DNA of 64,000 nucleotides from Narcine bancroftii. Its lineage: Eukaryota. The notes under the pieces were generated by a model. The model searched no databases. It had not been told where the DNA came from and worked only from the letters and a program-made list of their open reading frames with translations. Positions 7,231 through 64,000 of this stretch are shown here, in pieces. Numbering within the stretch: position 1 is the first letter of the stretch; every line of letters starts with the position of its first letter. The DNA lies in the NCBI RefSeq assembly GCF_036971445.1, contig NC_091469.1:212660001-212724000 (forward strand). Reading direction: 5' to 3'. A program made the position numbers and the translations under genes.

Positions 7231-7235
7231 AAATC

Positions 7236-8395
7236 AGGTTTAACAAATCTTATAGAGTTTTTGAGGAGGTTACTAAGTAACCTTAGTAACAGACAACAGT
7301 GGATGTTGTCTGTTTGGACTTTAGCAAGGCATTTGACAAGTTTCTGCATAAGAAGTTAGTTATGAAGGTGCAAGCATTAGATATTAATGTTGAAGTATTG
7401 AAATGGATTCAACAATGGTTGGATGGGAGATGCCAGAGAGTAGTGGTGGAAAATTGTTTGTCAAATTGGAGATCAGTGACTAGTGGAGTGCCTCAGGGAT
7501 CAGTACTGGGTCCTTTGTGTTTGTCATATATATTAATGATCTGTGGAATATAGGCCAGTTAGAAAAGTGGGCTGAAAGATAGTAGATGGAGTTTAATACT
7601 GAAAAGTGTGAGGTGCTATATTTTGGCAGGACTAATCAGCAACGGCCGTACACATTAAATGATTGACAATTGAGGAGTGCAGTAGAACAAAGGGATTTAG
7701 GAATTCTGGTACGTAATTCCTGAAAGTTGAGTCACATGGAGATAGGGTGGTGAAGAAAGATTTTGACATGTTAGCCTTTATAAATCAGAGTATTGAGTAC
7801 AGGAGTTGGGATGTCGTGATAAAGTTTTATAAGACAAGGGTGAGGCCAAATTTGGAATACTGTGTGCACTTTTGGTCGCCGAATTACAGTAAGGATATAA
7901 ACAGCATCGAGAGAGTGCAGAAGAGGTTTACGAAAATGTTTCCGGGGTTTCAGGGTTTGAGTTACAGGGAAAGGTTGAGGAGGCTTGGACTTTATTGTCT
8001 GGAGCATAGACAATTGAGGGGTGATTTGATAGAGGTATTCAAAATTATGAGGGGGACCGAAAGAGTCAATCTGGACAGGATTTTTCCATTGAGAGTGGAG
8101 GAGATACAAACAAGAGGACATGGATTGAGATTGAAAGAGAAAAAGTTTAGGGGAAACATGAGGGGGAATTTATTCACTCAGAGGGTGGTGGGTGTGTGGA
8201 ATGAACTTCCGGCTGAAGTGGTAGATGCAGGTTCGATGTTAATATTTAAGGAAAAGTAGGATAGGGTATATGGACGAGAGAAGTACGAAAGGTTATAGGC
8301 TAGGTGTGGGCCAATAGGACTAGGTGGGAGAAGGTGTTCAGCATGGACTAGAAGGGCTGAACTGGCCTGTTTCTGTGCTGGTATCATTATATGGT
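7236..8395 (+). mobile_element. Old CR1 LINE, 3' part (continuation of 2405-4655)
   Basis: The RT sequence resumes where it was interrupted (..CATGGTAAATC|AGGTTTAACAAATCTT..); DFSKAFDK and GVPQGSVLGP motifs, C-terminal ORF2 and a CR1 3' end follow. Confidence 0.85.
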
Positions 8396-8424
8396 GCAAC
8401 ACACACTTCCTTTGATATGGATCC

Positions 8425-8921
8425 TGTAGTGCGCGTCGAAAGAACCAAAGATTTGTTGATCCAAACCAAGGCTTTTATTAACTAAAAGACTGGAGCATAT
8501 CACAAGTAGGTCGACCAGTCCAGAATGACCTGGTCTGGCTAGGAGCAACCCTTTAAGACTTGCCAGTAGGTGTGGCTACACTCTCAGCCAATCACAGTCA
8601 TCCTACACTACCATCTGTACATATACACATTGGTGATAGAATCTGTACTATCACCTGGTCTGGCTAGGAGCAATCCTTTAAGACCTGCCAGTAGGTGTGG
8701 CTACACTCTCAGCCAATCACAGTCATCCTACACTACCATCTGAACATCTGTACATATACACATTGGTGATAGAATCTGTACTATCACCTGGTCTGGCTAG
8801 GAGCAATCCTTTAAGACCTGCCAGTAGGTGTGGCTACACTCTCAGCCAATCACAGTCATCCTACACTACCATCTGAACATATGTACATATACACATTGGT
8901 GATAGAATCTGTACTATCACA
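8425..8921 (-). mobile_element. Solo LTR with an internal triplication of a 125-133 bp unit
   Basis: TG...CA termini, minus-strand AATAAA near 8475 and near-TSD GATCC/GAGCC. Repeat units start at 8528, 8653 and 8786. Confidence 0.7.
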
Positions 8922-8984
8922 GAGCCCAAAGCTGTGCTCTCATCAATGCTTCATAAAGCCTGATTACATCCCTACTTTTATTCA

Positions 8985-9195
8985 GACATATACCATGGTG
9001 ACAGGCCCTCTTGGTCCATGAATCTGTGCCACCCAATTTATACCCAATTAACCTACACATCCCAGTACATTTTGAATGGTGGGAGATAACCAGAGCACCC
9101 GGAGGAAACCCACACAGACAGAAGGAGATGATACAAACTCCTTACAGACAGTGCCGTATTCAAACCCCATTCCCGATCACTGGCGCTGTAACAGA
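8985..9195 (-). mobile_element. HE1/V-SINE-like SINE
   Basis: Shares the core ACAAACTCCTTACAGACAG and flanks with the other SINE copies in the window. Confidence 0.65.
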
Positions 9196-9279
9196 ATATT
9201 GGGGCTGGATTATATTCTATTGAGTGATTATATACTTTAAATAAAAGCAACCATTCTATTTGCCTTGATTGAAGGAAGA

Positions 9280-15280: not shown

Positions 15281-16439
15281 TCTCTTCACCCACTCCAAAG
15301 CATCTCCATCCCTCCTGTAACACAGCAACCAGAACTGAATGCAATGTTCTCTTCACAATGTCGTCCCATTATTGGCCAATCTTAACAAACCCTCTGACCA
15401 GTTCTTTCCCATTACTGTTCACGCCAGTGGATAAGAGAGGAAAACAGTCGATCGAGATACATACGCAAGAACTAACATACAAGTCTCTGTTTGAAGGGAG
15501 TTCTGTGAGAGTCCCCCTTATTTTTTCCCCTCTGTAAACCTCTGCTCTCAACCAACATCTGCAGACTTACTTTCTTGTTTAACTCCATTCAGATGCTCCA
15601 CTACAGTCTCTTCGAGGAAACCCTGAAGTGGTTTTCCTTTGCAGACAATATAAAGATTGGAGGAGGGGCAGGTAGTTTAAAACACCCTGAAATGCTGGAG
15701 GAATTCAGCCAGTCTTTACAGCGTCTATAAGGGACAAATATATAATTGCCGATGTTTCAGGCCTGAGCTCTTCTTCAAGGAATAATTAGAAGACGCAGGA
15801 AATCTCAGAATTCAAACAAAGGGGGAGGAATCCAAACCAACAAAAGGTGTTAATTGGATATGAGAAGGGACGAGGTGAGAATTTATCATGTCTGTGTGAG
15901 AGGAGACAGGGAATGGAGAGATAGAGATGAGGGAAAGGGCAAGGGAGTTGATTGTGGCTGATTGGCTGTGGACTCAGCTTCTCTTACCTGCCATTCCCAC
16001 AACCCTTAATTACCCAATCCATTAAAAATCTACTCATTTGTGTCTTAAATACTTTCAACAAGGCAACCTCCTTGTTGGGCAGAGAATTCCACAGATTCAT
16101 CACTCAATGAGAAGCCAATTTCCGATTCCACCCAGATGGCGGGTCACAAATGTGCTGGAGAAACTCACCAGGCCAAGCATCAGAAGTTGTTGGCCTATTG
16201 GTTGTGATTGGGTGGCATGGGCTCCTGGGCCAAAATGGTCTGTTACTGTGCTGTATGTCTAAAAAAAATCTAAAAGATCATAGGAGCAGCTCAGCACCTT
16301 GGCCAAATGTTCCATTTCAAGTTCATGTTGTAATTAGATAAAATCAGTAGGTTTTTCAGGGATTCAGATCAATGAGGGAGAAAGAACACATCCAGGTGCA
16401 AAGGTGCAGTAAGGTACATGAAAGATTAATAAAACAAAA

Positions 16440-19400
16440 TGCGAAGAGAAGGAGGCAAGATGAGTGTGAGGGCAATTTTCTGCTCTCAGAGTCACATGTG
16501 GGAAGTCATGGAGTCTTCTTGTCTCCCGGACATCCACGTGTGCACAAAGTGGGCTGAGCTGCTGCGTCTAAGGGACCGAATCAGGGACAAGAATTATAGT
16601 CGTAGTACATGTTAGTACCAATGATGTTGGAGGGGCAGTGGGTTACCATTATGAGGGGGAAAGGGAAGGGTAAGGTTCAAGAGAAAGCACCTTAGTCTGA
16701 AATCCTCAGCATTCAGTACTCCTCCTTGAGTACTGAGGAGGGGGATAGTCAGACTATGGTGGGTAGAGGTGTAGGGTTAGCCTCTGTAGCCCAGAAAGGT
16801 AGGGATAGGAGGAAAAGGGTAATAGTTATAGAGGATTTGATGGTCAGGGGAACTGACAGAGGTTTTTGTGGACACAATAAAGAAAACCGGATGGTGGTTT
16901 GCCTCCCTGGTGCCAGGGTCCGAGATGTGACTATGCGTGCCCAGAACATCCTAAAAGGGGAGGGTAAAGAGCCTGAGGTCGTGGTGCATGTTGGTACCAA
17001 TGACGTTGGAAGGAAGGAGGAAGTGGTCCTGCAGAATGAATATAGAGAGTTAGGTAGGGAGTTTAGAAGAAGGACCACTAAGGGTATAATCTCTGGATTG
17101 CTTCCTGTGCCACGTGACAGTGATGACAGGAATAGAATCAGGTGGAGGTTAAATACATGGCTAGAGGGTTGGAGTAAGAGACAGGGATTTAAGTTCTTCG
17201 ACCACTGGGACCTTTTTTGGGGGAGATGGGACCGATACCATAATGATGGGTTACATCTGAATCCCAGAAGGAACAGTCTCCTGGCAGGGGCATTTGCTAG
17301 GGCTGTCAGGGGAGCTTTAAACTAGTATGGTTGGGGACAGGGGTTCAGTAAGGGAGGACACCAGAGAGGGGGGTTTGTAGGCAAAGGAAAAAGGCATATT
17401 CACATAATTTGGGGGTGGAATGGCGGGAAGTAATGAATAGATGCTATAACAACAATTGTGAGAATGGTAGAGAGGGTGAAAGGCAGAAGGTAAGATGTGG
17501 GAGATCTCTGAGATGTATTTATTTCAATGTGAGGAGTGTTGTAAGGAAGGTGGATGAGCTAAAGGTGTGGATTTATACGTGGCGTTATGTTGTGGCCATT
17601 AGTGAGACATGGATTTTGCTGCTTCAGATGTGTCAGAATTGGAGGAGTAAGAGGGGGAGGTGTGGCATTACTTGTCAGGGAAGATATTACAGTGGTGCTG
17701 AGGCAAGATGGACTGGAGGGCTCATTGAGGGAGGCAGTGTGTGTAGAATTAAAAAATAAGAAGGGTGAGGTTGCTATTATAGGGGTATATTATAGGCTGC
17801 CAAATGGGGAGAGGGAACTAGAAGAGCAAATATGCAAGGAAATAGCTGAGATGTACAGTAGGAATAGGGTGGTGTTGGTTGGGGATTTAAATTTTCCTAA
17901 AATAGATTGGGAAACACAGTCAGTGAGAGGGCAGGGTGACTTAGAATGTATATAATGTGTTCAGGACTGCTTTTTGCAGCAGTATGTGGAGATGCCCACT
18001 AGAGGGGAAGCAGTGTTAGAACTGTTGTTAGGGAATGAAATAGGGCAGGTAGCGGAGGTGAGCATTGGGGAGAACTTTGGAAACAGTGATCTTCGTCCAT
18101 TAGCTTTAGCTTACTTATGGAAAGGGATAGGTTGGTTCCGAAGTCGAAGGTATTTGAGCGGGGGAAGGCCAGATTTGGAGAAATGAGAAGGGATTTCCAG
18201 AGAGTTGTGTGGGCTGATCTTTTTGCCAGAAAGGATGTAGGGAAAAATTGGAGGGTATTTAAAGGTGAGATTTTGAGAGTACAGGATCTTTATGTTCCAT
18301 TCTGGCCGAAAGGCATGACAAAAAGTTCAAGGGAGCCATGGTTTTCTAGAAAAATTAGGAAGTTGGTTCGGGATAAGAGGGAGGCCTATGCTAAATATAA
18401 GAAACAAAAGATTGATGAGATGTATGATTGTTACTTAGATTGCAGAAAGAACCTTAAGAGGGAAATTAGAAAGGCAAAAAGAAGGTATGAAGTGTCCATA
18501 GCTAATAAGGTGAAAGTGAATCCAAAGGATTTTTACAGATACATGAATAGTAAAAGGAGGATGAAGTTTAGAGTAGGTCCACTGAAAAATGGGAACGGTG
18601 GACTATGTGAGGAACCATATGAGATGGGGGAGATATAAAATGATTTTTTCTTATTTGTATTCACAAGAAAAAGGGACATTGAACGATGTGAGATGTGAGA
18701 GAAATGGCTTAGTTATGGAAAGGATAGGGATTAGTAAAGAAAGGGTTTTGGAGCTTCTAGGGTCAATAAAGGTGGCTAAGTCTCCTGGTCCAGATGGGAT
18801 TTTTCCCAGGACGTTAAGGGAAGTCAGGGAACAAATAGAGGTGGCTCTGACAGTGATTTTTCAATGATCACTGGAGGTGGGTGTGGTGCCGCAGGATTGG
18901 AGGGTTGAAAATGTAGTTCCATGTTTAAAAAAAGACACAAGGTACAGGCCAAGTAATTATCAGCCAGTAAGTTTGACTTTGGTGGTGAGCAAAGTTATGG
19001 AGGGTATTCTTAGAGATAGTATGTACAAATATTTGGATAGGCAGGGGCACCCAGCATGGGTTTGTGAAGGGAAAGTCATGTTTGATGAACTTTGTTGAGT
19101 TTTTTGAAGAGGTGACAAAAGTAGATGAAGGTAGAATGGTTGACATGATCTATTTGGATTTCAGTAAGGCTGTTGATAAGGTTCTGCATGTAAGGTGAGT
19201 AAGGAAGGTTCAGTCACTAGGGATTAATAGAGAGATAGTGAGATGGGTTGAGAGGTGGCTGGAAGATAGACAACAGAGAGTCATGGTGGACAACTGTCTG
19301 TCAGGATGGAAGCCAGTGATGAGCGGTGTGTCTCAGGGATCAGTGCTGGGTCCCCTGTTGTTTATTATTTATTTATATTAATTATTTAGATAAGGGGGTG

Positions 19401-20345
19401 GTTAACTGGGTAAGCAAATATGCAGACGATATGAAAATAGGCGGAGTGGTGGATAGTAAGGAAGGTTTTCTTGGATTACAGAAGGATTTGGTTTGTTTGG
19501 AAAAGTGGGCTGAAAGATGGCAGATGAAATTTAATGTAGACAAGTGCGAGGTGATGCATTTCGGAAAAAATAACCAAAATAGGACATATGCAGTTAAAGG
19601 GAGGGCATCAAGGTATGCAAGGGAACAGAGGGATCTTGGCGTTATGGTAAAGATTTCCTTGAAAGTGGATTCCCAAGTAGACAGGTTAGTTAAGAAGACA
19701 TATGGTATGCTGGTCTTCATAAATCATAGGATAGAGTATAGAAACTGGGAAGTGATGCTGCTACTGTTTAACAAATTGGTGAGGCCAGGTTTGGAGTACT
19801 GTGCTCAGTTCTGGTCCCCAGATTATAGGAAGGATATAGATAAAGTGGAGAGGGTGCAGAGAAGATTTACAAAGATGTTGCCTTGCTTACAACATCTAGA
19901 GTACAGAGAAAGATTAAGGAGACTGGGACTTTATTCACTAGATCGTAGACGGTTAAGATGGTTGATAGAGGTGTTTAAAATTATGAAGGGAATAGTTAGA
20001 CTAAAGGTGAGTAGATTCTTTCCCCTGAGGGCAGGAGAGGTTGGAATAAGAGGGCATGAGTTAAGGGTAAGGAGGCAAAACTTTAGGAGAAATGTTAGAG
20101 GATGCTTCTTCACTCAAGAAGTGGTGGCTGAATGGAATGATCTTCCAGAGGAGATAGTTGTGACAGAGTCACTTCTGTCATTTAAGAGAAGGTTGGATGT
20201 GTACATGGATATGAAGGGTTTTGAGGGTTATGGGCGGAGAATGGGAGGGGGGAGCTAGTGGAGTTGTTCAAGTGAACTGGCGCGGATTCAAAGGGCTGAT
20301 ATGGCCTGTTTCCATGCTGTAAACTGTTATATGGTTATATATGAT
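16440..20345 (+). mobile_element. Near full-length but disabled CR1 LINE (ORF1 SGNH esterase + ORF2 EN/RT)
   Basis: ORF 16726-17325 has CLPGA, HVGTND and DGLHLN. ORF2 pieces carry GDLNFP, PGPDG and YADD (19326-20258) with several stops and frameshifts, followed by a 3' microsatellite tail. Confidence 0.9.
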
Positions 20346-20688
20346 AAGAACTTGCTCACAACTCATAATCAAAGAGTATTTCCTTTGGTCATTCAGCATT
20401 CTCATGCCCAAGGGAAGAAGCTGTTCCTGAGCCTGGTGGTGCTGGCTCTGATACTCCTGTATCTCTTCCCCAACAGGAGCAGCTGAAAGATGCTGTGGGC
20501 AGGGTGGAAGGGGTACTCACTGATTTTGTGCACTCTCCTTAAACAATGATCCTAATGGATCACATTGATGGGGGGAAGGGAGACTCCAGTGGTCGTTTCT
20601 GCCACAAATATGGTTCTGTGGATTGACCTCTGATAAGAAATAGATAATAAAAGCAGAAAACACTGCGATATTCAGGCAGCGTCTAAAG

Positions 20689-20821
20689 TAGAGGTTCTGA
20701 ACCTTTTTCTTTCCACTCACATTCCACTTGAAGTAATCCCTTACACAGGATGCCATAGGTGCTCTGCAAGGGATTACTTCAAGTGGTTTGTGAGTGGGTG
20801 AAAAAAGGTTGAGAACCTTTG
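20689..20821. mobile_element. hAT-type MITE (duplicate of 14192-14323)
   Basis: Near-identical to the first copy; TSD GTCTAAAG/GTCTAAGG. Confidence 0.75.
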
Positions 20822-21039
20822 GTCTAAGGGCTCGGACTCCATATGTTGACAATTCTTTTCCCCCGACTAAAGCCCTTTGAGCTGTTGACTTCCTCCAGCA
20901 GATTGGATTTTGCTTCATATTCTAGAATTTGCCATCTCTTGAACCTGAACCCTAATGTCTCCAGCATTTCAGGACTGGTCCTTTTTGATTAACGACAGAA
21001 CTAAAATGTAAATTCTTTCCTGCTTTTGTTCAAATTTGA

Positions 21040-21465
21040 TTCAAAGATGGGATTTTAATGTCATTTGAACAAATGAAACAAACTTGTGATGTTCCAAATG
21101 GCATTTTTCTTCGTTATTTACAACTAAGGGCTTTTCTAAGAGAAATTTGTGGAAATGATATGGCATTTTCAGGAGTGAGTCAATTGGAGCTTATATTATG
21201 GATGGGTAGAGTACCTAAATTTATTACTCGAATATATTATGCCCTCCAAATTGAGAGGAAGGAAGAAGTCTGGAATACAAAGATGGGAAGCAGATCTAGC
21301 AGTGAACATGTGTATGGTTTGGTGCAATCTAATTTTTTTGCATCAGTTATATTTGACTCCGCAAAGATTGCACAAATCAAAACCAGAAATATCAGACAGA
21401 TGTTTTTGATGCGAAATAGAGGAAGGAACATTTCTTCATTCAGTGTGGTCATGTACCAAGGTCAA
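21040..21465 (+). mobile_element. L1/Tx1-clade LINE ORF2 C-terminal fragment
   Basis: SFEQMK...FLRYLQLRAFL resembles the L1-clade ORF2 C-terminus; frameshifted. Confidence 0.55.
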
Positions 21466-21859
21466 TCTGCAGTATTTTACTCTCCATATATATAAGAAGG
21501 CGAATTTATGCCTGAAAGGACATTTAAGATTCTTTTCCAGGGGGATAGAATATGAAAGTAGGAATGTAATGAGGTTTTATGAAACATTAGTGAGAGCACA
21601 GTTTTGGGCTCCATATCAAAGGAAGGTTGCCCTTAGAGAGGGCCCAGTGGAGGTTGACATGGATAATCCCTGGAGTGATTGATTTTCATGCAAGGAGAAT
21701 TTGAAGGCTCTGGGGTTTAGAAGAATGAGGGTGGGGTCTCATTGAAACCATGGAATAGGCAAAGGCCTGGATATAGTGGATGTGGAGGGGATGTTTCCTC
21801 TGGTGGGGAAGTCCCAATAGAACCAAGAGGAGGGGACGCATCTGTGCTTGCTTTTGAAA

Positions 21860-22555
21860 TTGCTTTTATTGAGTTTAACATAAAAGCATAAATACAGAAT
21901 TGACAATTACATAGTAATTCATTCTTATGTGAGAAAGCACACATGAAAAAAGGTAGCAAAAACTACATCACTAATTGCTTGTCAGACCTCAAAAACAGTT
22001 AAACTGCAACCAGGTTAAACCCTTTTATTGAAATAACGCGTATAAAATAAAGGGAAAAAAGAAATTAAAAAATTAAAGACTGACTCTAATCTACACCCTC
22101 CTTCTAATAATAATTAATAAAAAGATCAATAATGTGGAAAAACTGGCAACCCCGAGAGAACACGCAATGAACGACTGGAACATAGAACAAGTGATAATTC
22201 CTCCAATTATAATGGAAGAGTTAGGAATGAGCCCCACAATTTCAAAAGTTGAAACTTTCTATCTTAAACGTTATATCAGATTTATTTCCAATAGAACATT
22301 AAACTACTGAGTGTGAATCTCCCTTCCATTTCAATAAGCTAGCTCGTCTGGCTATCAACTTGGTAAAAGCTACAGCTTTTTCTGAAGACAACAATACAGG
22401 TTTATCTGGATCACAAGAAAAACCAAACAAAGCAATTAATGGGTAAGGTTCCAAATTAATCTTAAGAATCGTTGATAAAGGTCTTTCCAAAAACTCTCTA
22501 AATCTGGGCACTCCCCAAAACTTATGGATCAGAGAAGCTTGAAAAAATTTACATT
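21860..22555 (-). mobile_element. L1-clade LINE 3' fragment
   Basis: ORF 22299-22559 (PLIALFG...IARRASLLKWK) followed by a T-rich 3' UTR with minus-strand AATAAA. Confidence 0.55.
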
Positions 22556-48600: not shown

Positions 48601-50112
48601 TCTCTCTCATGGGAATACCTGTACACTGACCAGTGTTCCTCATTCAATCTATCGGGGGATATCTGTTCACTGACCAGTATCTCTCAGTCCGCTCTCTCAG
48701 GGAGATATCTTACACTAACCAGTATCTCTCAGTTCCTCTCTCTCAGGGTGATATCTTACACTGACCAGTATCTCTCAGTTCCTCTCTCTCAGGGAGATAT
48801 CTTACACTGACCAGTATCTCTCAGTTCCTCTCTCTCAGGGGGATATCTTGCACTGACCAGTATCTCTTAGTCCTCTCTCTCTGGGGGATATCTGTACTCA
48901 GACCAGTATCTCTCAGTCCCTCTCTCTCAGGGAGATATCTTGCACTGACCAGTATCTCTCAGTCCTCTCTCTCAGGGGGATATCTTACACTGACTTGTAT
49001 CTCTCAGTCCTCTCTCTCAGGGGGATATCTTACACTGACCAGTATCTCTCAGTCCCTCTCTCTCAGGGAGATATCTTACACTGACCAGTATCACTCAGTC
49101 CTCTCTCAGGGGGATATCTTACACTGACCAGTATCACTCAGACCCTCTCTCTCAGGGGGATATCTGTACACTGACCAGTGTCCCTCAGTCCCTCTCTCTC
49201 AGGGGGATGGATATCTGTACACTGACCCATATCTCTCCATCCCTCTCTCTCAGAGGGATATCTGTACTCCAACCAGTATCTATCAGTCCCTCTCTCTCAA
49301 GGGGATATCTTACACTGACGAGTATCTTCAGTCCCTCTCTCTCAGGGGAATATCTGTACATTGACCTGTATCTTTCAGTCCCTCTCTCTCAGGGGGGTAA
49401 ACTACAGTGACTGGTTTCTCTCAGTCCCTCTCTCTCAGAGGAATATATGTACACTGACTGGTGTCTCTTAGGCCCTGTCTGTCAGGGGAATACCTGTACA
49501 CTGACCTGTGTTCCTCAGTCCTTCTCTCGGGGGTTATCCATACAGTGACCAGTATCTCTCAGTCCCTCTCTCATGGGGTTATCTGAATACTGACCAGTGT
49601 CTGTCAGCCCCTCTCTCCTCTCAGGGGGATATCTATAAACTGACCAGTCTCTCAGCCCCCCTCTCTCTCTCCCCGGGGGATATGTGAACACTGATTAGGG
49701 TCCCTCAGCCCCCTCTCTCACTCTCGGGGGATATCTGTACACTGACCACTATTTGTCAGTGCCTTCCTCTCTCTCTCTCAGGGGGATATCTGTACTCAGA
49801 CCAGTATCTCTCAGTCCCTCTCTCTCAGGGAGATATCTTACACTGACCAGTATCTCTCAGTACCTCTCTCTCTTAGGGGGATATCTTACACTGACCAGTA
49901 TCTCTCATTCCCTCTCTCTCAGGGGGACATCTTACACTGACCAGTATCTCTCATTCCCTCTCTTTCAGGGGGATATCTTGCACTGACCAGTATCTCTCAG
50001 TCCTCTCTCTCAGGGGGATATCTGCACACTTACCAGTATCTCTCAGTCCCTCTCTCTCAGGGAGATATCTTACACTGACCAGTACCTCTCAGTCCCTCTC
50101 TCTCTCTCAGGG
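45695..50112. repeat. Satellite array of 45-47 bp monomers (TCTGTACACTGACCAGTATCTCTCAGTCCCTCTCTCTCAGGGGGATA) with a 2022-bp higher-order duplication
   Basis: Directly visible; identical ORFs at 47185 and 49207 are offset by 2022 bp. Confidence 0.95.
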
Positions 50113-50315: not shown

Positions 50316-50407
50316 GCAGCGCTCACTGCAGCTCCCGACAAAGCCGGTCTGAGCTGAAGCCGCCGACCTGTGCAGTGTCCATCATGTCTGGCTCGGTGCG
50401 CGGGGCG

Positions 50408-50453
50408 ATGGGACTCGCTCCTTATCTCTTTCTCCTTCTGTGCTGTCTGGCAG
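50408..50453 (+). CDS. IgW: IgW heavy-chain leader exon (MGLAPYLFLLLCCLAG); an upstream in-frame ATG lies at 50384
   Basis: Hydrophobic signal peptide, phase-1 donor G|GTGGGT, 114-bp intron; resembles shark IgW leaders. Confidence 0.88.
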
Positions 50454-50567
50454 GTGGGTGTCCCCGTGTCTTCACCCCGCCCGCCCGCCCGGGGTCGGCT
50501 GCGTCTCGGACACTCTCTCCCCGTGGAACCGTTCCCTGAAGTCCGCTCTTTTCTCTTTTCTTGACAG

Positions 50568-50865
50568 GCGTGCGGTCCGAGGTGGTGCTGACCCAGCCCG
50601 CGTCAGTGGTGCAAAAGCCCGGGGCGTCCGTCACGCTGACCTGTAAGACCAAGGGGTTCAGTCTCAGTAGCAACTGGATGCACTGGGTGAAACAGGAGTC
50701 CGGGAAAGGGCTGCAATGGGTGTCAGTAGTAACGAGTACTGGTAGCAAATATTATGCGTCTGGATTCCAAGGCCGATTCACCGTTTCCAAGGACAGCAAC
50801 ACCGTCTACCTGGAAATAAACAGCCTGAGCGTGAAGGACACGGCCACCTATTACTGTACGAGAGA
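50568..50865 (+). CDS. IgW: IgW VH segment (GVRS-EVVLTQP...YYCTR), germline and open
   Basis: Acceptor TTTTCTTGACAG; canonical Cys, WVKQ, GKGLQWV and DTATYYC; followed by an RSS. Confidence 0.95.
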
Positions 50866-50904
50866 CACAGCGAGAGGAACCGGGGCTGGGCCGCTGCAAA
50901 AACC
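50866..50904 (+). promoter_or_regulatory. V 3' RSS with 23-bp spacer (CACAGCG-23-GCAAAAACC)
   Basis: Heptamer 50866-50872, nonamer 50896-50904. Confidence 0.92.
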
Positions 50905-51101
50905 CAGCGCCTGCCCTCAGGGTTCAGGGCCCCGGAGTGAATGGGCAGCAGGACTGACCCCAGGGGATTCCCGGCCTCGCTGCGCCGCCGTCGGCCCTCG
51001 CTGGGACTAGGAGGCGAGGGGTCCGCATGACTCCCGGGAAGACCAGGCGATCCGCGGATCGATTCCCAGAGCAGGTCGGCGCCGAGCGCCGCGGATGGGA
51101 C

Positions 51102-51129
51102 TGTTGTTGAGCGGCGCTGTGTCACCGTG
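51102..51129 (-). promoter_or_regulatory. D 5' RSS with 12-bp spacer (TGTTGTTGA-12-CACCGTG)
   Basis: Heptamer 51123-51129, degenerate nonamer 51102-51110. Confidence 0.8.
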
Positions 51130-51135
51130 TGGGAC
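51130..51135 (+). other. IgW: DH segment, 6 nt (TGGGAC)
   Basis: Lies between two inverted heptamers, each with a 12-bp spacer and a nonamer. Confidence 0.85.
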
Positions 51136-51163
51136 CACGGTGATGCGGAGCTGAACAGAAATT
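51136..51163 (+). promoter_or_regulatory. D 3' RSS with 12-bp spacer (CACGGTG-12-ACAGAAATT)
   Basis: Heptamer 51136-51142, nonamer 51155-51163. Confidence 0.82.
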
Positions 51164-51466
51164 GGCGCCGGCCGATCAGCGGCTGCAGGGCAGCCCGTCT
51201 CCACGGATCCCGCACGGCTGCTTCCCACGGCCACCTCCCCGAAACATGGCTGTGGCTGCTGGAGGGGCAGGGACTTTTCCGGCCAATGAAGCGGCCAAAA
51301 GGAGGCGACTGAGTTTCGGGCGGGACGGTGCGAGCCGGCGCCCGCACCACAGCAACACGGCAGGAAGAGACGAGCCCGGAGTCCGTGCCGGGAAGCGGCT
51401 GCCGGGGGTGCAGACGGGCCTCGGACCGGCCCTTGGCGGAGGTGGCTGGACGTGACGGGCCAGCGG

Positions 51467-51505
51467 AGTTATTGTACTGGGCGAGTCGGGAGACGGAGCA
51501 GTGTG
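51467..51505 (-). promoter_or_regulatory. J 5' RSS with 23-bp spacer (AGTTATTGT-23-CAGTGTG)
   Basis: Nonamer 51467-51475, heptamer 51499-51505. Confidence 0.88.
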
Positions 51506-51545
51506 GACTACTGGGGGAAAGGAACCTCGCTGACAGTGGCTTCAG
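51506..51545 (+). CDS. IgW: JH segment (DYWGKGTSLTVAS)
   Basis: WGxG motif; phase-1 donor CAG|GTAAG at 51546. Confidence 0.93.
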
Positions 51546-53469
51546 GTAAGACCCAGCCTCTCCATTCATTCCACCCTTCCCCATTGCTAATTGATGACTT
51601 TGCGGCCTGAGACCAGTGAGATCAAGGGAGCCGTGACTGGAAGCTCCCCGAGACGGGCGGGTGAAGTGTTTCCCGTCGGCTGCTTTCTCGGTTCCAGCCA
51701 GGCTGCGGGAAACGTGTGATCCGGTTAAAGTCTGAATAACCCCCAGGGTCCAGGTGGAGCTCGGTCCGCTCCTGTCATGTCTGCTGTGAGGCCCGTCCCA
51801 GGACACACAACCCCCGACTGCAGAGAGAGACGAGCCCGGGATTTGATGATGGGCGCAGAGATTTATTCCCTGATGGGTGGGCTCGGTGGGAAGCAGCGGG
51901 AGGAGGCGGAATCGGGAAGGAGAGACCGGGAAATGAACACAGAGGGCTTTTCCAGGTGCCTTCTCCGCTAAGAATGCGCATCCCAGCGCAGCTGTCCTTT
52001 CAGCTTTCAACACTGCCACCGAACTGCAATTTAAAGGGACGCTTCTGCTTCTTCAGGCGCCTTCTTGGCAGAGAATGCACCTGGAAAAGGCTACTGAGCT
52101 GAGCTGCTTCTCGCTCTCGGAGGAGGGTAACGTCGCTCGCCTCAAGAGCGCCTCCTGCACATTCAGGTGGCCTCAAAACAGCCGCATATTGCCGGAACAT
52201 GCGGCTTTACGCGCGGGACAATTGGCCACCTGAAAGTGCCTTGAGTGACTTCCTCGGTCCCAGGGCAGGAGATGGGAATCTTCAGTCCATGATCGCTCAG
52301 CGTTTCACAGAAACTAGGGTGGATGCAGCAACTGTGTGATCTGGATCGCACTGAGTGCAAGGTGGTGGGTGGTTATGGCTCCGGGGGGAAACACAGAAGG
52401 AACACAGAAATCCTGGAGGAACTCAGCCGGTCTCGCAGGGTCCACAGGAGGTAATGATATATTCCCCACGTTCGGTTTCTGAAGAAGCCACGTTCAGGTG
52501 TAAGGAACAATTTGGAAATAAAGGCTGGTGACTGGAGAGGGGGAAAGGGGTGGGGGGGGGGGGCGACCAAAATTTGTTAATTGGATATGAGGAAAGGTGA
52601 GAATTGATATTGGCTGTGGAGGGAGGAGGGGAGAGAAAACAGGCGCAAAGGCGAGAGGGGGAAGGAGAGGGGAGTTGGTTTTACGGAACCCGGAGATAAT
52701 AGTATAGAAGGAACAGGAGAGGGACCTCCCCACCACCCCTTTAAGGAAGGGGAAAAGTGGTTGGAGAGTGACCATTCAGTTGAGTGGCAAGCGCTGGTCC
52801 GGTTGGATGAATTGATTCGATCTGTGCGCAGTCATTCAGTGGAACGACTAATTGTATAAATCCAGAAAACACCCACTCGAGGAAATCCCGTGAAATATCC
52901 CAGGGCGCTCAGAGCCGGAGTGAAACGCCGAATTAGGACCCCCATGCACTGTCCTGTCAGATACAAAGTTCCTTTCGAACTTCCTTCTCGATCTCAGAGC
53001 ATGGGGGAGTGGGAGTGGGGGGTTGGGGATGGAGTTCCCTCCACACTCTCCTGTTGTAGCCTCCAGGACATTGACGGACACAATACATGGAATCTAACTC
53101 TCCATGTTGTTGTGTCCAACACTACCGGGGTGGGGGGAATGCGACTGAGCGCAGAGGATTCTATACACTGGGAAAACAATATGATGTGGAAAGTTCGCAG
53201 AAATGAATGGTTGGGACAGAGAGAAAATGTTGTATCCAGTGGGGTTGTGATTTTTCAGGAGGACATATTTCCTGTCTCTACTCTTGAATTGCAATATTCA
53301 GTGTCCAGAAAACAAAGCGTTTCATTCCGTATTAAGTATGAATTTAAGGCTCAGAGTTTGGAGTTTCTGATGTTCTTCCACTTACTGACATCATATCGAA
53401 TCCTAAACTAGCTGTTCATTCCTACATTCCCAGGGAATTCTTTTAGAAATCCCACTCTGCCCTCAAACC

Positions 53470-56060: not shown

Positions 56061-56363
56061 AGGTTGAGTCGTTGCCATCGGTCTTCATCGCCCCTCCCTG
56101 CCACAGAGAAGCTGACCAAGAGATCAGCCTCCTGTGTCTGGTCAAGGATTATCAGCCTGAGAGCATCATCCAGACATGGTCCACGAGCAGTGGGGACATC
56201 ACCACTGGATTCAAGAAATATCCAGCAGTGTTGGGGCAGAATGCAAAGTACACAATGAGCAGCTTACTCCGAGTCCCTGCGGTGGAATGGAAAAGCAACA
56301 ATGTCTACTCCTGTAAGGCAGGGTACAAACCAGACAAGTTTGTGAAAGAGGATTACATGAAAC
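56061..56363 (+). CDS. IgW: IgW CH1 exon
   Basis: EVESLPSVFIAPPC...SLLCLVKDYQPE..QTWS..KKYPAVLGQNAKYTMSSLLRV..YSCKAGYKPD matches IgW CH1 as I recall it. AG/GT phase-1 boundaries; an extra Cys is available for the light-chain bond. Confidence 0.93.
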
Positions 56364-57362
56364 GTTAGTATGAGATTTGATTTCTGTTTCGAACTACATT
56401 GTGTTGAGGGTTAAAACTTGAGCAGGAACCTTGGTCCAAAATGTACAAAGGTGTCCATTCCTCCTTTTCCTCATTTGTTCAATTCCTACAAGCCAGTGGT
56501 GTCTGCAGCTCACAAAAAAGGCCGTGATATATTGTGTGGAAGCAGATGATGAATGAAGCGTTCTCCTCCAGTCCATGAACCTGAGTTTTAGAGGAAGTTA
56601 CAAGCAGCAATTTGTGCTGAACTGCCTCCTTTATATCCACTCATTGATCTCATTTCAGAAGACTCTCCACCATCCCCACTGCCCGGCCCAAGCATCTCCT
56701 TCCAGATTAGCTCCTTGACACAGAACCAGGCATCGATATTAGCCACCGTTCCTGCACAAGCAACACGAGTTCAACTTTGACCCACTCCGTCCGCACTTTC
56801 CCTCAGTCCTGTCCTGTGTCTGAGTAAAACTCGCACTCCTTATGAAGATGACTGAAGAATCGACATCCCCCACTTGACTTTATCCATCACCTCCCAGATG
56901 TGAACAAATCATTGCATTTAAAAGCAAATCATTTCCTCTTGTCTGCCTGTTCTTCTTTCTCATTAAGCTCAAAACTGTGGTTCCCAAACATCCTGTTCCA
57001 CCCCATCTGCTCATACCCACAGGATCTGCAATCAGCCTTTCCTCTGCATGGTATATTCCACAGAATAATCAGATCACTGATGGTCTGCCCATAGAGGCCA
57101 CTTACTGTTTCATCCCCCTCAACACTGCAGTGTGGGACACACTGCTGGGGAGGCCTGTATCATCCATCTAGATCTCCCAATCAGAGCTCTACCCAATATT
57201 TCACGATAGGATCCAGCCTCTCAACAGATCATCTGTTAATGAACAGAATTGTAGAATGGGCTGACGTTGGGCGACTTGCAGTGGAGGTAGGGATGGAGTC
57301 CACCTACACGGTGGCCAGTTGTATCATCAGTAATATTGCATTAATATTGCATTGTTTTACAG

Positions 57363-57668
57363 CTCAATCTCCAAAGCTCACACCTCTGGCTCCAACCCCA
57401 AAGATTCTTTCCAATCAAACAAATACTATCCTGGGCTGTATGATATCACAATTTACTCCTGATCGGATTCGGGTGACCTGGAAAAAAGCCGGATCAGAGC
57501 AATTGAGCAGTCTTCTCCCTTCCAAGAGGAGACCCGATGGTGCATTTGAAACAGTCACCTACCTGACCGTGTCTGTGGACGAATGGACCAGCAAACAGGA
57601 ATATACTTGTGAAGTGATCCACACACCTTCCAACTTCCATCAGAAGATCACCATGACATATCAAGGGG
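57363..57668 (+). CDS. IgW: IgW CH2 exon
   Basis: PQSPKLTPL..LGCMISQFTPDRIRVTWKK..YTCEVIHTPSNF..MTYQG; C1-set Cys/Trp/Cys; phase-1 AG/GT boundaries. Confidence 0.93.
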
Positions 57669-58314
57669 GTGAGTGGTGTCTGAAGGAGAATTAATTTACT
57701 TGCTGTTTTCAACAAGCTGACCTTCACCCAATTCATGTCCCTGATGTAAGTCCTGTTGAGTGATGCATAATGTCTACATTTCTACCCTTCTACATTTCAA
57801 ACTAACCCTTTCCATCAGTAATTTTAACCCAATCTATTGTACAGGACGGGAAAGTTTGCGTCTCCTCTGGCATTTACTCCCACACAATTCTAGTCACAAC
57901 TGTGGAAGGCAAATGGGACATCAAGCAAGATGCATCCCATCTGAAGAAAATCTCCATCTTCACTTTTAGTCTGTTTCTGGGAAAAATACCTCCAGTTGAG
58001 TGTCAGACTGTGGAGAGTCATTCAATCTCCATGGTAACCTAAGAATCTTCCCAGCACGTCATCCACTCACAAAATTGGATCCTTGTTCAGTTTTCCCCCC
58101 CACCCCCCACCCCAAAAGAAAACTGGAATTATGACTTGTGCCCTTGATTTCTCTGATCCCAGACAAGGTACAACAGGTTTGCATTATCCTGATCTGATAG
58201 GATGCTGAATTCAGAGGATAGAGATCGGGACTGTGTGGAGCTGCTTCGTTTGCCAGTGCAGGAAGTACAGGTGAAATTATCTGATGATTAAACCTATGCA
58301 TCTTCCATTTCCAG

Positions 58315-60528: not shown

Positions 60529-60828
60529 AATTGTTTGTCTCGATTCAAAATCCCTCCATTAAAGAGATCTGGATCAACAAAACAGCTACACTGGTGTGCA
60601 CAGTCATCTCTGCTGATCCGAGCAAGGTCTTCATCGCCTGGGAGGTGAACGGGGAGGATAGAAGCGATAAAGCTGTGACCTATCAGCCCACAAAGGAAGG
60701 GTTCCAAAACACAAAAATCAGCCGACTCCAGACCAGCGTGGAGGAGTGGTCCAGTGGGATAGAGTACACGTGCTCTGCCCAAGATCCTTTATCCTCAGCA
60801 GTGTCAGCCCGGACAAAAAGCACCAAAG
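60529..60828 (+). CDS. IgW: IgW CH3 exon
   Basis: ELFVSIQNPSIKEIWINKTATLVC..IAWEVNG..EWSSGIEYTCSAQ; phase-1 boundaries. Confidence 0.92.
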
Positions 60829-60913
60829 GTAGGCAAGAGATCACTGATTAAACCACAAACATCAGTGTCATTACGAGAAGGAGTTCAACATTTTCTTTGC
60901 TCTTGTGTTCCAG

Positions 60914-61231
60914 TTGAGACAAAGCCGCCTGAGGTCAGACTGCTACCTCCACCATACGAAGGGTCCAAGCGGAGGAAGACGGCTACCCTCGAATGTGTGG
61001 TCTCAGAGTTCTACCCAGACCACATTGATGTCACCTGGAAGAAAGGTCGCTCCCTGATCTCCTCCAACACCAGCTCGACACGCACTGCTCTGGAGCAGGC
61101 TGGGACTTTCAGTGCCAGTCACTTCCTGACTGTGAGTTCACAGGAGTGGAAGGCAGGCTCAGTCTTTAGCTGCACAGTGTCTCATCCCTCCTCCAACACC
61201 AGCATCACAAAGGAAGCGAGGAATACCCAAG
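60914..61231 (+). CDS. IgW: IgW CH4 exon
   Basis: VETKPPEVRLLPP..ATLECVVSEFYPDHIDVTWKK..FSCTVSHPSS; follows CH3 after an 85-bp intron. Confidence 0.93.
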
Positions 61232-61992
61232 GTAGGGTCCTGTCCCACTCCATTGTGGACATTGTTTGCTTTATGTTGTACATTATGCCAGACAAGCTCA
61301 ACATGGAAACATGGTGCAGGCCTGTTGTGGTTTTGTGCCTCAACAGATCATCCAGAATCTTGGCCAGAGAAATAAGTGTCTCCCTGAAATTCCTTTCATG
61401 ACTTCTTCCAAATGGTCTTTCTTTCTGTCTTTGAATGTAATCTGAGCCTCTGATCATCGCCTCAGCGGTGACGGAATGTTCAACCGGGCAGCACTCTCTC
61501 TGCTCCAGCCTGGGCAATGTGTAAAAGCCTCTGCAGGATGGCTTGAACACAAAACCTTCTGACAAAGCAGATTTCAGTGCACTTCTTGGAGGCAAAATGC
61601 ATTCTAACAGTTGTGACAAAGATCAAGTATTTCTGATGATTGAATTTTAAAAGTATAAAGGAAAAGTGCTGGAATATTTCTCACCTAAAGTATTAGCTCG
61701 GCTTCCCTGGAGCCCGAAATGTTTGAATTTTCTGTGGATGGCAGCAGCTTCAGTGCCCACGAAAATGTCAAACTGACACCAGAGATAAACTTGTTCATTT
61801 CCATTCCTGAGGAGGGTTTATCCTGTCTGCTCAAGTGGGAAACCTCATTCCTCCACCAACGTAGATAATTCTCGACTGATCTGATGGGACCAACAAATCA
61901 CTTGCTGGAGATGAGCAGGAAATGTTGGTCTCATCAGTGACGCCCCCATCCATTAGGGAAAGGTGAAATAATAATTGTGATGTTTCTCCCAG

Positions 61993-62313
61993 AAGACTGT
62001 CCAGATACCCACCTCTCGGTCACTTTAAGGAAACCTTCTTTCCATGAGATCTGGACGAACAGGACGGCGACCATTCTGTGTGAGGTGGTCCGTGGTAATT
62101 TAGACGGATTCAGGGTAACCTGGCAGGTGCACGGAAGTAAGAGAGAAGACGGGGTGAGAACTCAAGGACCAATCAGAGACGGAGATGAAGACACAATCAT
62201 CAGCAGGCTGGTGGTCCCCGCAACAGAGTGGGAGATTGGGACGGAGTACTTGTGCATTGTGGAGGACAAGAGTTTGCCAACACCAGAGAAGAGGTCCATT
62301 AAGAAGGCCACAG
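61993..62313 (+). CDS. IgW: IgW CH5 exon
   Basis: EDCPDTHLSVTLRKPSFHEIWTNRTATILCEV..VTWQVHG..YLCIVEDKSLPTP; phase-1 boundaries. Confidence 0.92.
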
Positions 62314-63748
62314 GTACGTGAAGAGAGAGTTCAGTGTGAGTCTGATCGTAGCAAGTAGAGGAATGATAATGGTAATAAGGTTTTGTCATCGCCAATGTAC
62401 ATTGTACAGAGGCAAGGCAGATGTCACCATCCAGCAGTGGTGGACTCGGGGGGGGGGGGGGGGGGGGGGAATGAGAGCGGGGTAGGCCATTCACCCCTTC
62501 ATTCCTGCTTAGACATTCAATATGATCACAGCAGATCATTCATACTGCGCCCCCTATTCCTGCCTTCTCTCCATGACCCTTGATCCCTTTACCCTTGGAA
62601 CTATATCTAGCTCATCCTTAAATATATTTAATCATGGGCTTCAACTGCTCTCTGTGGCAGAGAATTCCCCAGGTTTGCTGTTCTCCTGGTGAAGACATTT
62701 TCACTCTTACACCATCTTCAGCATGCCACACTGTTCCTGGATTCTGCCATCTTCAGGAACATTCTTCTAGCTTCAAGTCTGTCCAGTCTTGTTCGGAATG
62801 TTGCTGCTTCCATGAGACTCTCCACATTCGTCTTTGCCCTGTTAAAGGTCTTATGTTGGTCAGAGAATATTAGCCTCCAGGGAAGGGTTCTCCAACATGG
62901 TTAATATCAACCCCTGGGGCATGAAGGGACTATCCAAGGAGTTGATAAATGCCTGGGGATCAAAAGGGGGTTGATAAACACTGGGGGGAGGGGTCAATTG
63001 AACTTTGGGGTCAAAAGCAGGGGCATGTCTACATAAAATATCACGAGAGTGGTACCCATGCTGTAATTGGCTTTGGCAACTTAATAGGTAGTGAGTGAAG
63101 GGGGGATGGGGAAGGGTGGACAGAGTGGAGAAGAAAGAGGTCTACATCAGTGCTGCCACTACCCCTCCCCCGGTCAGAACTGCCTGGATCAAGGATTCCA
63201 TGTAGAGGATGATGGTCTAAAAGGTTTGGGGTCCCTGCTCAGTAAAATCCCAAATCACCATAGAGGCCTCACCCAAGACCACACTAGTTCCTGTGGGGTT
63301 GGTTCCTGTGATGGTGTTGAGGGAGAAGGATCTGCAGCTTTCAAACCGTGAGGGACACACTGAGTCAAGGCAGTGAGTGGAAGGGCAGGGAGGCTGAGGC
63401 ACAGAATGAAGTTTAGAAGATCATTTAATCAAAGGGGGAGATGAACAAACAGCACAGGATGGGGCAAGTCCAGGGTCCAACCCAACTTCTGGGTGTCTGT
63501 GTGATCAATGGCTCCCAGTGAATAAAGTGAACAGATAAACCTCTCTGGAAGCTCCAAAATGTATCTGATTCAAGATTTCCTCCCTGCACATCCCCACAAC
63601 GAGCAGAAATGGAAAAGGCTTTAGTGTCAGGTAAAGTGAAATCCCTCGAGGTGTAGAAGTTGCCCATGTTGGTTTGAAACCGTACTGCGTGGGTTAAGCA
63701 CAGAACTATTGAAAGATGCAGTCTAACTGAGGTTCTCTTTGTTTCTAG

Positions 63749-64000
63749 GTGGAGTTGTGACTTCTCCTCACATCTATCTCCTCCCCCCTTCATCAGATGA
63801 GTTCGAGGCAGATCAGTCTGCGACCCTGATGTGCCTGGTCAACAAGTTCTCTCCTGCAGACATCTATGTGGCCTGGATGGCCAACGACACTCTTCTGAAG
63901 ACTGGATACGTGAACCATCCAGTGACCGAGGACACCAGGAGGGACTGGAACACCATGACTAGTCAGTTGAAGATTTCTCTAGAGGAGTGGAATCGCGGCA
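63749..64000 (+). CDS. IgW: IgW CH6 exon (truncated by the window end)
   Basis: Acceptor TTTGTTTCTAG; GGVVTSPHIYLLPPSSDEFEADQSATLMCLVNKFSPADIYVAWMANDT..SQLKISLEEWNRG is open to the window end; not in the ORF track. Confidence 0.9.

What the first reader, a model, noticed from the sequence alone, without database searches (positions are those of the whole stretch)
50866..51545. Single-D IgW cluster: V(23)-(12)D(12)-(23)J with a D of only 6 nt, possibly a germline D1-D2 fusion
Seen: only 640 bp separate V and J, and I find one D (TGGGAC) flanked by two 12-RSS, with no other heptamer/nonamer pair. Established: the canonical elasmobranch IgH cluster is V23-12D1(22/23)-12D2(12)-23J, and sharks and skates carry germline-joined segments attributed to RAG activity in germ cells. 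Inference: this tetrapod-like 12/12 single-D layout is what a germline D1-D2 join with trimming would leave, or else a deletion of D1. Either way the locus needs two joins instead of three and has much less junctional diversity.
Basis: partly seen in the sequence, partly recalled or inferred. Interest (0 to 1): 0.8.

Follow-up and report, generated by a model that had tools for sequence, protein, structure and literature searches.

The report
One-D IgW antibody gene cluster
This is an intact, transcribed ray IgW antibody gene whose V and J pieces are bridged by one 6-base D piece; the same D module occurs in a manta ray, so it is probably an old ray design and not a recent fusion of two Ds.

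Summary
The layout is V exon (to 50865) with a 23-RSS, then 12-RSS/TGGGAC (51130-51135)/12-RSS, then a 23-RSS and J (51506-51545). At least six IgW/IgX-type C exons follow. No second D signal lies in the 640-bp interval, and 0 of 20,000 shuffles give such a D module.

The unrearranged form stands in DNA contigs of two samples. It is also transcribed in RNA of two further individuals.

A recent, cluster-specific D1-D2 germline fusion is not supported. A Mobula birostris gene model reads V + TGGGAR + the same heptamer-12-nonamer + a D-J spacer colinear with this one (E 5e-20). A Pristis model back-translates to a homologous 13-nt D with the same 3' 12-RSS. Four unchecked scan notes report the same one-D layout in other clusters of this genome.

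Family-wide RNA junctions mostly carry longer Ds that this cluster lacks, and relatives' J is 5-8 nt longer. This cluster is therefore a trimmed-down member of its family. Interest is moderate.

The parts
50408..50453 (+). Leader exon. The ATG at 50408 is shared with other batoid IgW leaders (MGLAPYLFLLLCCLAG). An upstream in-frame ATG lies at 50384. The donor GT is at 50454.
   Evidence: P0049 residue 1 aligns at 50408. RNA loose end at 50454 continues with the start of the V exon (table 7).
50568..50865 (+). V exon. It is an intact V-set domain with Cys, Trp and YYC, and it ends in TGTACGAGAGA.
   Evidence: ORF; PF07686, E 7.7e-15; 53-55% identity to batoid VH models.
50866..50904 (+). V 23-RSS: CACAGCG, 23-nt spacer, GCAAAAACC.
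   Evidence: Other batoid gene models read through the same signal (DTVRETGTGPGQKP).
51102..51129 (+). D 5' 12-RSS: nonamer TGTTGTTGA, 12-nt spacer, heptamer CACCGTG.
51130..51135 (+). D coding segment, TGGGAC (6 nt).
   Evidence: Homologous cores are TGGGAR in Mobula P0002 and ATGTGGGAYATHC (back-translated) in Pristis P0044.
51136..51163 (+). D 3' 12-RSS: heptamer CACGGTG, 12-nt spacer, nonamer ACAGAAATT.
   Evidence: This is the most conserved part of the Mobula alignment (WDHGDAELNRNW against WEHGDGELNRNW, 10/12).
51164..51466 (+). D-J spacer. It holds no second D and is colinear with the Mobula read-through.
   Evidence: Identical RNA contig over 51252-51351 (table 8).
51467..51505 (+). 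J 23-RSS: nonamer AGTTATTGT, 23-nt spacer, heptamer CAGTGTG.
51506..51545 (+). J segment (DYWGKGTSLTVAS), with the donor GT at 51546. It is 5-8 nt shorter at its 5' end than the J of relatives.
   Evidence: tables 4, 5c and 7 (CGCTC put in behind 51505; the loose end at 51545 continues with C1).
56061..56368 (+). C1 exon (3' end approximate).
   Evidence: (67% identity to skate IgX C1).
57371..57691 (+). C2 exon (limits approximate).
   Evidence: (59% identity to skate IgX C2).
60531..64000 (+). C3 (about 60531), C4 (about 60925), C5 (about 61977) and C6 (from about 63766, cut by the window end).

Best explanation
This is a structurally intact, unrearranged IgW (skate 'IgX') heavy-chain minilocus of a ray. 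It belongs to an old class of batoid IgW clusters that carry one D flanked by two 12-RSSs.

Mechanism (inferred from the established 12/23 rule). V and J both carry 23-RSSs and so cannot join directly. RAG must join the D 3' 12-RSS to the J 23-RSS and the V 23-RSS to the D 5' 12-RSS, which makes two joins. Six germline D bases will often be nibbled away. The D would then work mainly as a 12/23 adaptor that creates two junctions for N/P addition, so CDR3 would consist mostly of non-templated bases.

The layout is inherited and not a recent accident of this cluster. The D core, its 3' 12-RSS and the D-J spacer are shared with a manta ray. Within its family the cluster is a trimmed-down member, because both its D and its J are shorter, flush with their heptamers, than those of relatives.

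Shown: the anatomy, its non-random nature, the germline state, transcription of the unrearranged locus, and the homology to Mobula.

Inferred: that this particular D is used, the adaptor role, and the age of the layout.
For: Anatomy and statistics.

IgW identity.

Germline state: a 954-nt DNA contig of the source sample spans 50582-51535 with 0 differences. A DNA run of another study tiles 50823-51567 with 0 differences across the D (table 8).

Transcription: in two RNA runs the V-D-J spacers have 5-20 times the depth of the leader and J-C introns. Contigs identical to this cluster lie over 50924-51070 and 51252-51351. In the source DNA run no other contig of at least 80% likeness lies on these spacers (tables 2 and 8).

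Age:
- Mobula P0002 residues 112-206 align to window 51118-51381 at 46% identity, E 5e-20. The RSS module is 10/12 identical, and no stretch is left for a second D.
- P0002 was the only hit of a whole-library HMMER search with the read-through frame over the D (E 1.6e-10).
- Pristis P0044 'PRWWGAEHKL' matches the window's 'PR*CGAEQKL', that is heptamer, 12-nt spacer and nonamer.
- Four other one-D notes exist in this genome (AI notes, unchecked).

N-rich junctions: V-to-J joints in RNA carry 10-37 inserted letters with GC-rich runs (table 5c).
Against: - No rearranged transcript could be assigned to this cluster. The 12 junctions shown come from reads laid at 80% likeness, so from the whole family. 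None holds intact TGGGAC and only two hold TGGGA.
- 7 of the 12 carry a CTAGCTGGAGT-like core that this cluster lacks, and two of those also have a TATATGGA- or GGGATA-like element upstream. Two-D clusters may therefore exist in this species, in which case one D is not universal.
- Mobula P0025 back-translates to a TGGGAYGG end followed by a 23-spacer signal, which is a canonical D1 type.
- The Mobula and Pristis evidence comes from proteins of gene models that read through non-coding DNA. Back-translation leaves third codon positions open, and the Mobula V-D junction could be a modelling artefact.
- The reviews I could read describe cartilaginous-fish clusters as having two or three Ds (PMC6795676, PMC3149040, PMC3308330).
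- The primary skate IgX and nurse shark IgW genomic papers were not held.
Confidence: 0.6

Rival explanations
1. Ancient germline D1-D2 fusion. In an early batoid, RAG acting in germ cells joined D1 to D2 in one IgW cluster. This removed the D1 3' 23-RSS, the D2 5' 12-RSS and the D1-D2 spacer. The product (12-D-12) then multiplied and now forms the one-D class seen here, in Mobula and in Pristis.
For: The outcome, 12-D-12 with a short D, is what such a join leaves. A TGGGA-type core precedes a 12-spacer signal in Mobula P0002 and in this cluster, but a 23-spacer signal in Mobula P0025. That fits a D1 core now abutting a D2 3' RSS. Germline joining by RAG is established in cartilaginous fish (PMC2193156, PMC5192425). 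Pre-joined D segments are reported for bamboo shark IgNAR clusters (PMC8692893).
Against: There is no direct evidence. The flank-homology test could not be run. A 6-nt product would need trimming of most of two Ds. The Pristis homologue has a 13-nt D with the same RSS, so the short length is not tied to the layout. D1 and D2 may simply be old duplicates that share a core.
Confidence: 0.2
2. Recent, cluster-specific germline event. A D1-D2 join or a D1 deletion happened in this one cluster of this species.
For: The V-J interval here is shorter (680 nt) than in the four other one-D clusters noted in this genome (800-846 nt). Both D and J are shorter than in relatives.
Against: The same D core, 3' boundary, 3' 12-RSS and colinear D-J spacer occur in Mobula. 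Other clusters of the same genome are reported to have one D as well (unchecked). No paralog of at least 80% likeness covers the spacers in the source DNA run, so the cluster is not a young copy (table 2).
Confidence: 0.05
3. Erosion of coding ends flush with intact heptamers. The one-D layout is inherited, but the extreme shortness of D (6 nt) and J came from elsewhere. One source would be repeated germline RAG nick-and-reseal ('open-and-shut') events that nibble coding ends. The other would be ordinary small deletions, of which only those sparing the RSS survive.
For: Contigs of a paralog or allele carry CGCTC exactly between the J heptamer and the J coding start (table 4). Junction inserts of relatives end in CGCGCTCA before J (table 5c). 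The Pristis D is about 3 nt longer at its 5' end and about 4 nt longer at its 3' end. Other first-reader notes in this genome report deletions flush with V heptamers (unchecked).
Against: Mobula shares the short 3' boundary of the D, so at least that side is old. The direction of change (loss here or gain elsewhere) is unknown. Survivorship alone can produce flush boundaries.
Confidence: 0.15

Closest known systems
Canonical elasmobranch IgH minicluster (V23 / 12-D1-22/23 / 12-D2-12 / 23-J / C), as in horn shark and nurse shark IgM
   Same: It has one V, one J and one set of C exons in a compact cluster. V and J carry 23-RSSs. Segment spacings are 250-370 bp. The sole D has the 12/12 signals of a canonical D2. 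All segments face the same way.
   Different: There is only one D, and no D with a 22/23-spacer 3' signal. The cluster needs two joins instead of three. The D is only 6 nt long. Reviews describe two or three Ds per cluster (PMC6795676, PMC3149040, PMC3308330).
Skate IgX / shark IgW heavy-chain genes (e.g. Raja eglanteria AAA75596, Pristis 'immunoglobulin delta heavy chain-like')
   Same: C1 is 67% and C2 59% identical to skate IgX. There are six C1-set exons. The leader, V, V-RSS and V-D spacer are homologous to gene models of Pristis, Hemitrygon, Mobula and Narcine.
   Different: I could not find the number of Ds in published skate IgX or shark IgW clusters in the papers held. This D is shorter than the Pristis homologue (about 13 nt by back-translation).
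Tetrapod/teleost IgH D segments (12-D-12 between V23 and J23)
   Same: The RSS logic is the same, with a single D per rearrangement.
   Different: This is a cluster with one D and no D array. The D is 6 nt. From my own memory, not checked here, the shortest well-known Ds are human TRDD1 at 8 nt and IGHD7-27 at 11 nt.
Germline-joined (VD-J, VDD-J, VDJ) clusters of cartilaginous fish
   Same: If the layout arose by a D-D join, it would be the same RAG-in-germ-cell process (PMC2193156). Mobula P0002 looks like a VD-joined version of this very cluster type.
   Different: Here V, D and J are all still split and carry their signals. Nothing in this cluster is demonstrably joined.

Membership tests
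IgW/IgX heavy-chain cluster | VH-type V-set exon with leader, a J with the WGxG motif and a splice donor | tested here: met
   The J-to-C1 splice is seen in family RNA.
IgW/IgX heavy-chain cluster | Six C1-set constant exons with specific similarity to skate IgX / shark IgW | tested here: met
   (six C1-set exons, the sixth cut by the window end). C1 is 67% and C2 59% identical to Raja eglanteria IgX.
IgW/IgX heavy-chain cluster | Secretory and transmembrane exons | not tested
   They lie beyond the window end. Earlier notes of the scan deal with them.
Canonical elasmobranch V-D1-D2-J cluster | V with a 23-RSS and J with a 23-RSS | tested here: met
Canonical elasmobranch V-D1-D2-J cluster | D1 with a 5' 12-RSS and a 3' 22/23-RSS | tested here: not met
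   No 22-24-spacer signal lies inside the interval on either strand.
Canonical elasmobranch V-D1-D2-J cluster | D2 with 12-RSSs on both sides | tested here: met
   The only D has 12/12 signals.
Germline-joined (D-D) cluster | The 5' flank is homologous to D1 5' flanks and the 3' flank to D2 3' flanks of split paralogs, with the break inside the D | not testable with these tools
Germline-joined (D-D) cluster | The configuration is present in germline (non-lymphoid) DNA | tested here: inconclusive
   The configuration is the consensus of DNA contigs in two samples, and the RNA contigs that lie on the V-D and D-J spacers in two more individuals match it without a difference. The tissues are unknown. 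Since it is the unrearranged form, somatic origin is not a concern.
Functional D segment | The D is used in rearranged transcripts | tested here: inconclusive
   Many V-to-J joints were seen, but reads were laid at 80% likeness, so they come from the whole family. No junction could be assigned to this cluster (tables 5 and 5c).

The most novel reading that the evidence does not exclude
Ray IgW clusters as a class use a tetrapod-like single 12-D-12 segment, founded by an ancient RAG-mediated germline D1-D2 join, or else representing the ancestral IgH state. In some members, germline nibbling flush with the heptamers has reduced D and J until D is a 6-nt pure 12/23 adaptor. That would be a heritable record of RAG activity on coding ends, and a correction to the textbook 'V-D1-D2-J' picture for one isotype.
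Probability: 0.2. Interest if true: 0.6.

Novelty: new variant of a known kind. Interest (0 to 1): 0.4.

Why it matters
The reviews I could read describe shark and ray heavy-chain clusters as carrying two or three Ds. A conserved one-D class of IgW clusters across ray orders would mean that the tetrapod-type V23/12-D-12/23J logic also exists inside the cluster system. That bears on how the D1-D2 arrangement and the translocon locus arose.

A 6-nt D also gives a natural test of how much a germline D matters when TdT is active. For this single cluster the finding is modest: it is an ordinary, intact member of a known gene family with an unusually short D and J.

Tried and rejected
- Word search with the 413-aa spurious minus-strand ORF that spans V-D-J, used as a proxy for paralog DNA: no hit.
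- Whole-library HMMER search with the 93-aa read-through frame over the D: only Mobula P0002.
- Hemitrygon read-through models (P0037, P0038, P0046): I could not place a D or its RSSs by back-translation. No conclusion was drawn.
- Narcine P0003. It is a paralog with an internally deleted V. Its tail diverges from this cluster just where the D 5' nonamer starts, and I could not interpret it without DNA.
- Second D. A permissive RSS scan gave only a weak unpaired site at 51348, which I rejected.
- An alternative 5' heptamer, CGCTGTG (51115-51121), would give a 14-nt D. I rejected it because no nonamer lies at 12 or 23 nt.
- Literature. The six reviews and papers read give no D count specific to IgW. 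Harding 1990, Zhang 2013 and Rumfelt 2004 are not held.
- RIC scoring of the RSSs was not available.
- Motif statistics on the junction inserts were not scripted, because that would have meant typing sequences into a call. They were read by eye.
Exons were searched singly by reference.

Full report
**1. What is there**

The stretch is the V-D-J part of a compact immunoglobulin heavy-chain cluster on the + strand.
- The leader exon runs from 50408 to 50453. Its ATG is the one shared with other batoid leaders. An upstream in-frame ATG lies at 50384.
- The V exon runs from 50568 to 50865. It is an intact V-set domain (PF07686, E 7.7e-15).
- V is followed by heptamer CACAGCG, a 23-nt spacer and nonamer GCAAAAACC (50866-50904).
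- The D 5' signal follows at 51102-51129: nonamer TGTTGTTGA, a 12-nt spacer and heptamer CACCGTG.
- The D coding segment is the six bases TGGGAC (51130-51135).
- The D 3' signal follows at 51136-51163: heptamer CACGGTG, a 12-nt spacer and nonamer ACAGAAATT.
- The J signal lies at 51467-51505: nonamer AGTTATTGT, a 23-nt spacer and heptamer CAGTGTG.
- J itself runs from 51506 to 51545 (DYWGKGTSLTVAS) and ends at a GT donor.
- Six C1-set exons follow from 56061 to the window end. C1 is 67% and C2 59% identical to Raja eglanteria IgX.

The window holds no other V.

**2. Is it more than chance, and is there a second D?**

A scan of both strands with spacers 11-13 and 22-24 found only the four signals above. 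The one extra match is a weak unpaired site at 51348 (5/7 + 5/9, 13-nt spacer).

None of 20,000 dinucleotide-preserving shuffles of the interval gave a 12-RSS/short core/12-RSS module of this quality. Only 82 gave even one such 12-RSS.

The two D signals are moderate matches (heptamer 6/7, nonamer 6/9). However, the D 3' signal is the best conserved part of the alignment with a manta ray (section 4).

**3. Germline state and expression (reads laid at 80% likeness)**

DNA evidence:
- A 954-nt contig of the probable source sample spans 50582-51535 without a difference.
- A DNA run of another study, filed under another organism name, tiles 50823-51567 without a difference across the D. This gives a second sample, though probably of the same or a very close species.

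RNA evidence:
- Two further runs behave as RNA, with exon depth more than 100 times intron depth.
- In these runs the V-D and D-J spacers have 5-20 times the depth of the leader intron and the J-C intron.
- They are covered by contigs identical to this cluster (50924-51070 and 51252-51351).
- In the source DNA run no other contig of at least 80% likeness lies on these spacers, so these are transcripts of this unrearranged cluster.

Germline ('sterile') transcripts of split shark Ig genes are known (PMC5192425).

The same runs show dozens of V-to-J joints, from 50857-50866 to 51506-51512, with 10-37 inserted letters. A loose end at 51545 continues with the C1 exon start. At 80% likeness these joints come from the whole IgW family, and I could not assign any to this cluster.

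**4. Relatives**

As a proxy I used gene models of other rays that read through the V-RSS into non-coding DNA.

*Mobula birostris P0002*
- It reads YYCAR-GWE-HGDGELNRNW and then 118 further residues.
- Residues 112-206 align to window 51118-51381 at 46% identity, E 5e-20.
- The D/RSS module is 10/12 identical (WDHGDAELNRNW against WEHGDGELNRNW).
- The alignment continues to ...TRQQETRTE against TRQEETSPE, near the J signal.
- Back-translated, this is TGGGAR | CACGGNG, a 12-nt spacer and a nonamer compatible with ACAGAAATT.
- The manta ray therefore has the same D core, the same 3' D boundary, the same 12-spacer signal and a colinear D-J spacer with no room for another D.
- In that model V abuts the D directly. 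This suggests a germline VD-joined copy, though it could be a modelling artefact.
- P0002 was also the only hit of the whole-library HMMER search with the window's read-through frame (E 1.6e-10).

*Pristis pectinata P0044 and P0049*
- About 95 residues after the V-RSS they carry '...GPVMWDIPRWWGAEHKL'.
- This matches the window's 'PR*CGAEQKL' in another frame.
- It back-translates to a D of about 13 nt (ATGTGGGAYATHC) followed by CACGGTG, a 12-nt spacer and an ACAYAARYT nonamer. Third codon positions are undetermined.

*Other models*
- Hemitrygon, Mobula hypostoma and Narcine bancroftii models share the V-RSS and the V-D spacer.
- The Narcine model also shares the promoter region. This fits the earlier notes that the genome is an electric ray.

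*Earlier notes of this scan*
- Four first-reader notes on other pieces of this genome each report 'only one D (12/12 RSS) between V and J', in intervals of 800-846 nt.
- These are unchecked AI notes and I could not read those windows.

**5.

The first is not found. The second is largely met, because the one-D module is shared with another ray order and apparently with several clusters of this genome. A recent, cluster-specific D1-D2 fusion or D1 deletion is therefore unlikely; I put it at about 5%.

The origin of the class is not settled. An ancient germline D1-D2 join remains possible (about 20%). One hint favours it. A second Mobula model, P0025, back-translates to a TGGGAYGG end followed by CACAGTG, a 23-nt spacer and ACACAAACC. 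The same kind of core thus sits before a 23-spacer signal in one cluster and a 12-spacer signal in another.

**6. Counter-evidence and open points**

Of the 12 best-supported junction inserts (table 5c):
- seven carry a CTAGCTGGAGT-like core that this cluster does not have;
- two of those also carry a TATATGGA- or GGGATA-like element upstream, in that order;
- two others carry an ACTGGGA(A/G)CTA motif.

Other, strongly expressed IgW clusters of this species thus have longer Ds, and some may have two. None of the 12 holds an intact TGGGAC.

The reviews I could read describe clusters with two or three Ds (PMC6795676, PMC3149040, PMC3308330). The primary papers on skate IgX and nurse shark IgW genes were not held. 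I cannot say whether a one-D IgX/IgW cluster has been published.

**7. A trimmed-down member**

- Contigs of a paralog or allele carry five extra bases (CGCTC) exactly between the J heptamer and the J start (table 4).
- Many junctions of relatives end in CGCGCTCA before the J.
- The J here is therefore 5-8 nt shorter at its 5' end than in relatives, flush with its heptamer.
- The D is 7 nt shorter than the Pristis homologue, again flush with both heptamers. Its 3' boundary is shared with Mobula, so that side is old.

Three causes are open: germline RAG nick-and-reseal with nibbling, ordinary deletions filtered by survival of the RSS, or gains in the relatives.

**8. How it most likely works**

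V and J both carry 23-spacer signals, so the 12/23 rule forbids a direct join. The D is needed as a 12/12 adaptor, and two joins build the V domain.

With only six germline D bases, and with the long GC-rich inserts seen in this species, CDR3 would be made mostly of N/P nucleotides. A full-length join without additions is out of frame (2 + 6 bases before J), so productive joins need trimming or additions.

The anatomy is shown. The use of this D and its adaptor role are inferred.

**9. Verdict**

- The finding is a variant of a known kind of locus and of moderate interest.
- It would rise in interest if a survey of germline clusters showed that one-D IgW is the rule in rays and had not been described.

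Noticed in passing
window 49000-50104: A 46-bp minisatellite (23 copies, 80% matches) ends about 280 bp upstream of the leader ATG, directly next to the promoter region of the IgW cluster.
   Followed up: no
window 50873-51498: The unrearranged V-D-J spacers are transcribed in two RNA runs at 5-20 times the depth of the leader and J-C introns. These are germline ('sterile') transcripts in which only the true introns are spliced out (table 2).
   Followed up: partly
window 51505/51506: A paralog or allele has CGCTC inserted exactly between the J heptamer and the J coding start, and relatives' junctions end in CGCGCTCA. This J is 5-8 nt shorter, flush with the heptamer (tables 4 and 5c).
   Followed up: partly
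window 51002, 51096, 51130: The D hexamer TGGGAC occurs three times within 135 nt. The copy at 51096 lies immediately 5' of the D nonamer and is conserved as 'RGWD' in the Narcine paralog P0003.
   Followed up: no
P0002 (Mobula birostris gene model): V appears joined directly to the D (YYCAR-GWE-heptamer) while the D 3' 12-RSS and the D-J spacer are retained. This is a candidate germline VD-joined IgW cluster in a manta ray.
   Followed up: partly
P0025 (Mobula birostris gene model): V is followed by 26 Cys-rich residues (GCYYDVYESIQSYRRRYTMGCDGWDG) and then what back-translates to CACAGTG, a 23-nt spacer and ACACAAACC. This could be a VD1-joined cluster with a long two-Cys CDR3 stub.
   Followed up: no
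window 50778-52019, minus strand: A 413-aa ORF runs antisense through the whole V-D-J region. It has no relatives, lies in 61% GC DNA, and is almost certainly spurious.
   Followed up: yes
window 2000-12000 and 16000-22000: Long stretches show strong G-over-C skew (up to +0.49) at 40-45% GC. They were not examined and may be repeats.
   Followed up: no
window 50382-50385: Paralogs have 1-2-nt deletions around the upstream in-frame ATG (50384). The conserved start is therefore probably the ATG at 50408 (table 4).
   Followed up: partly
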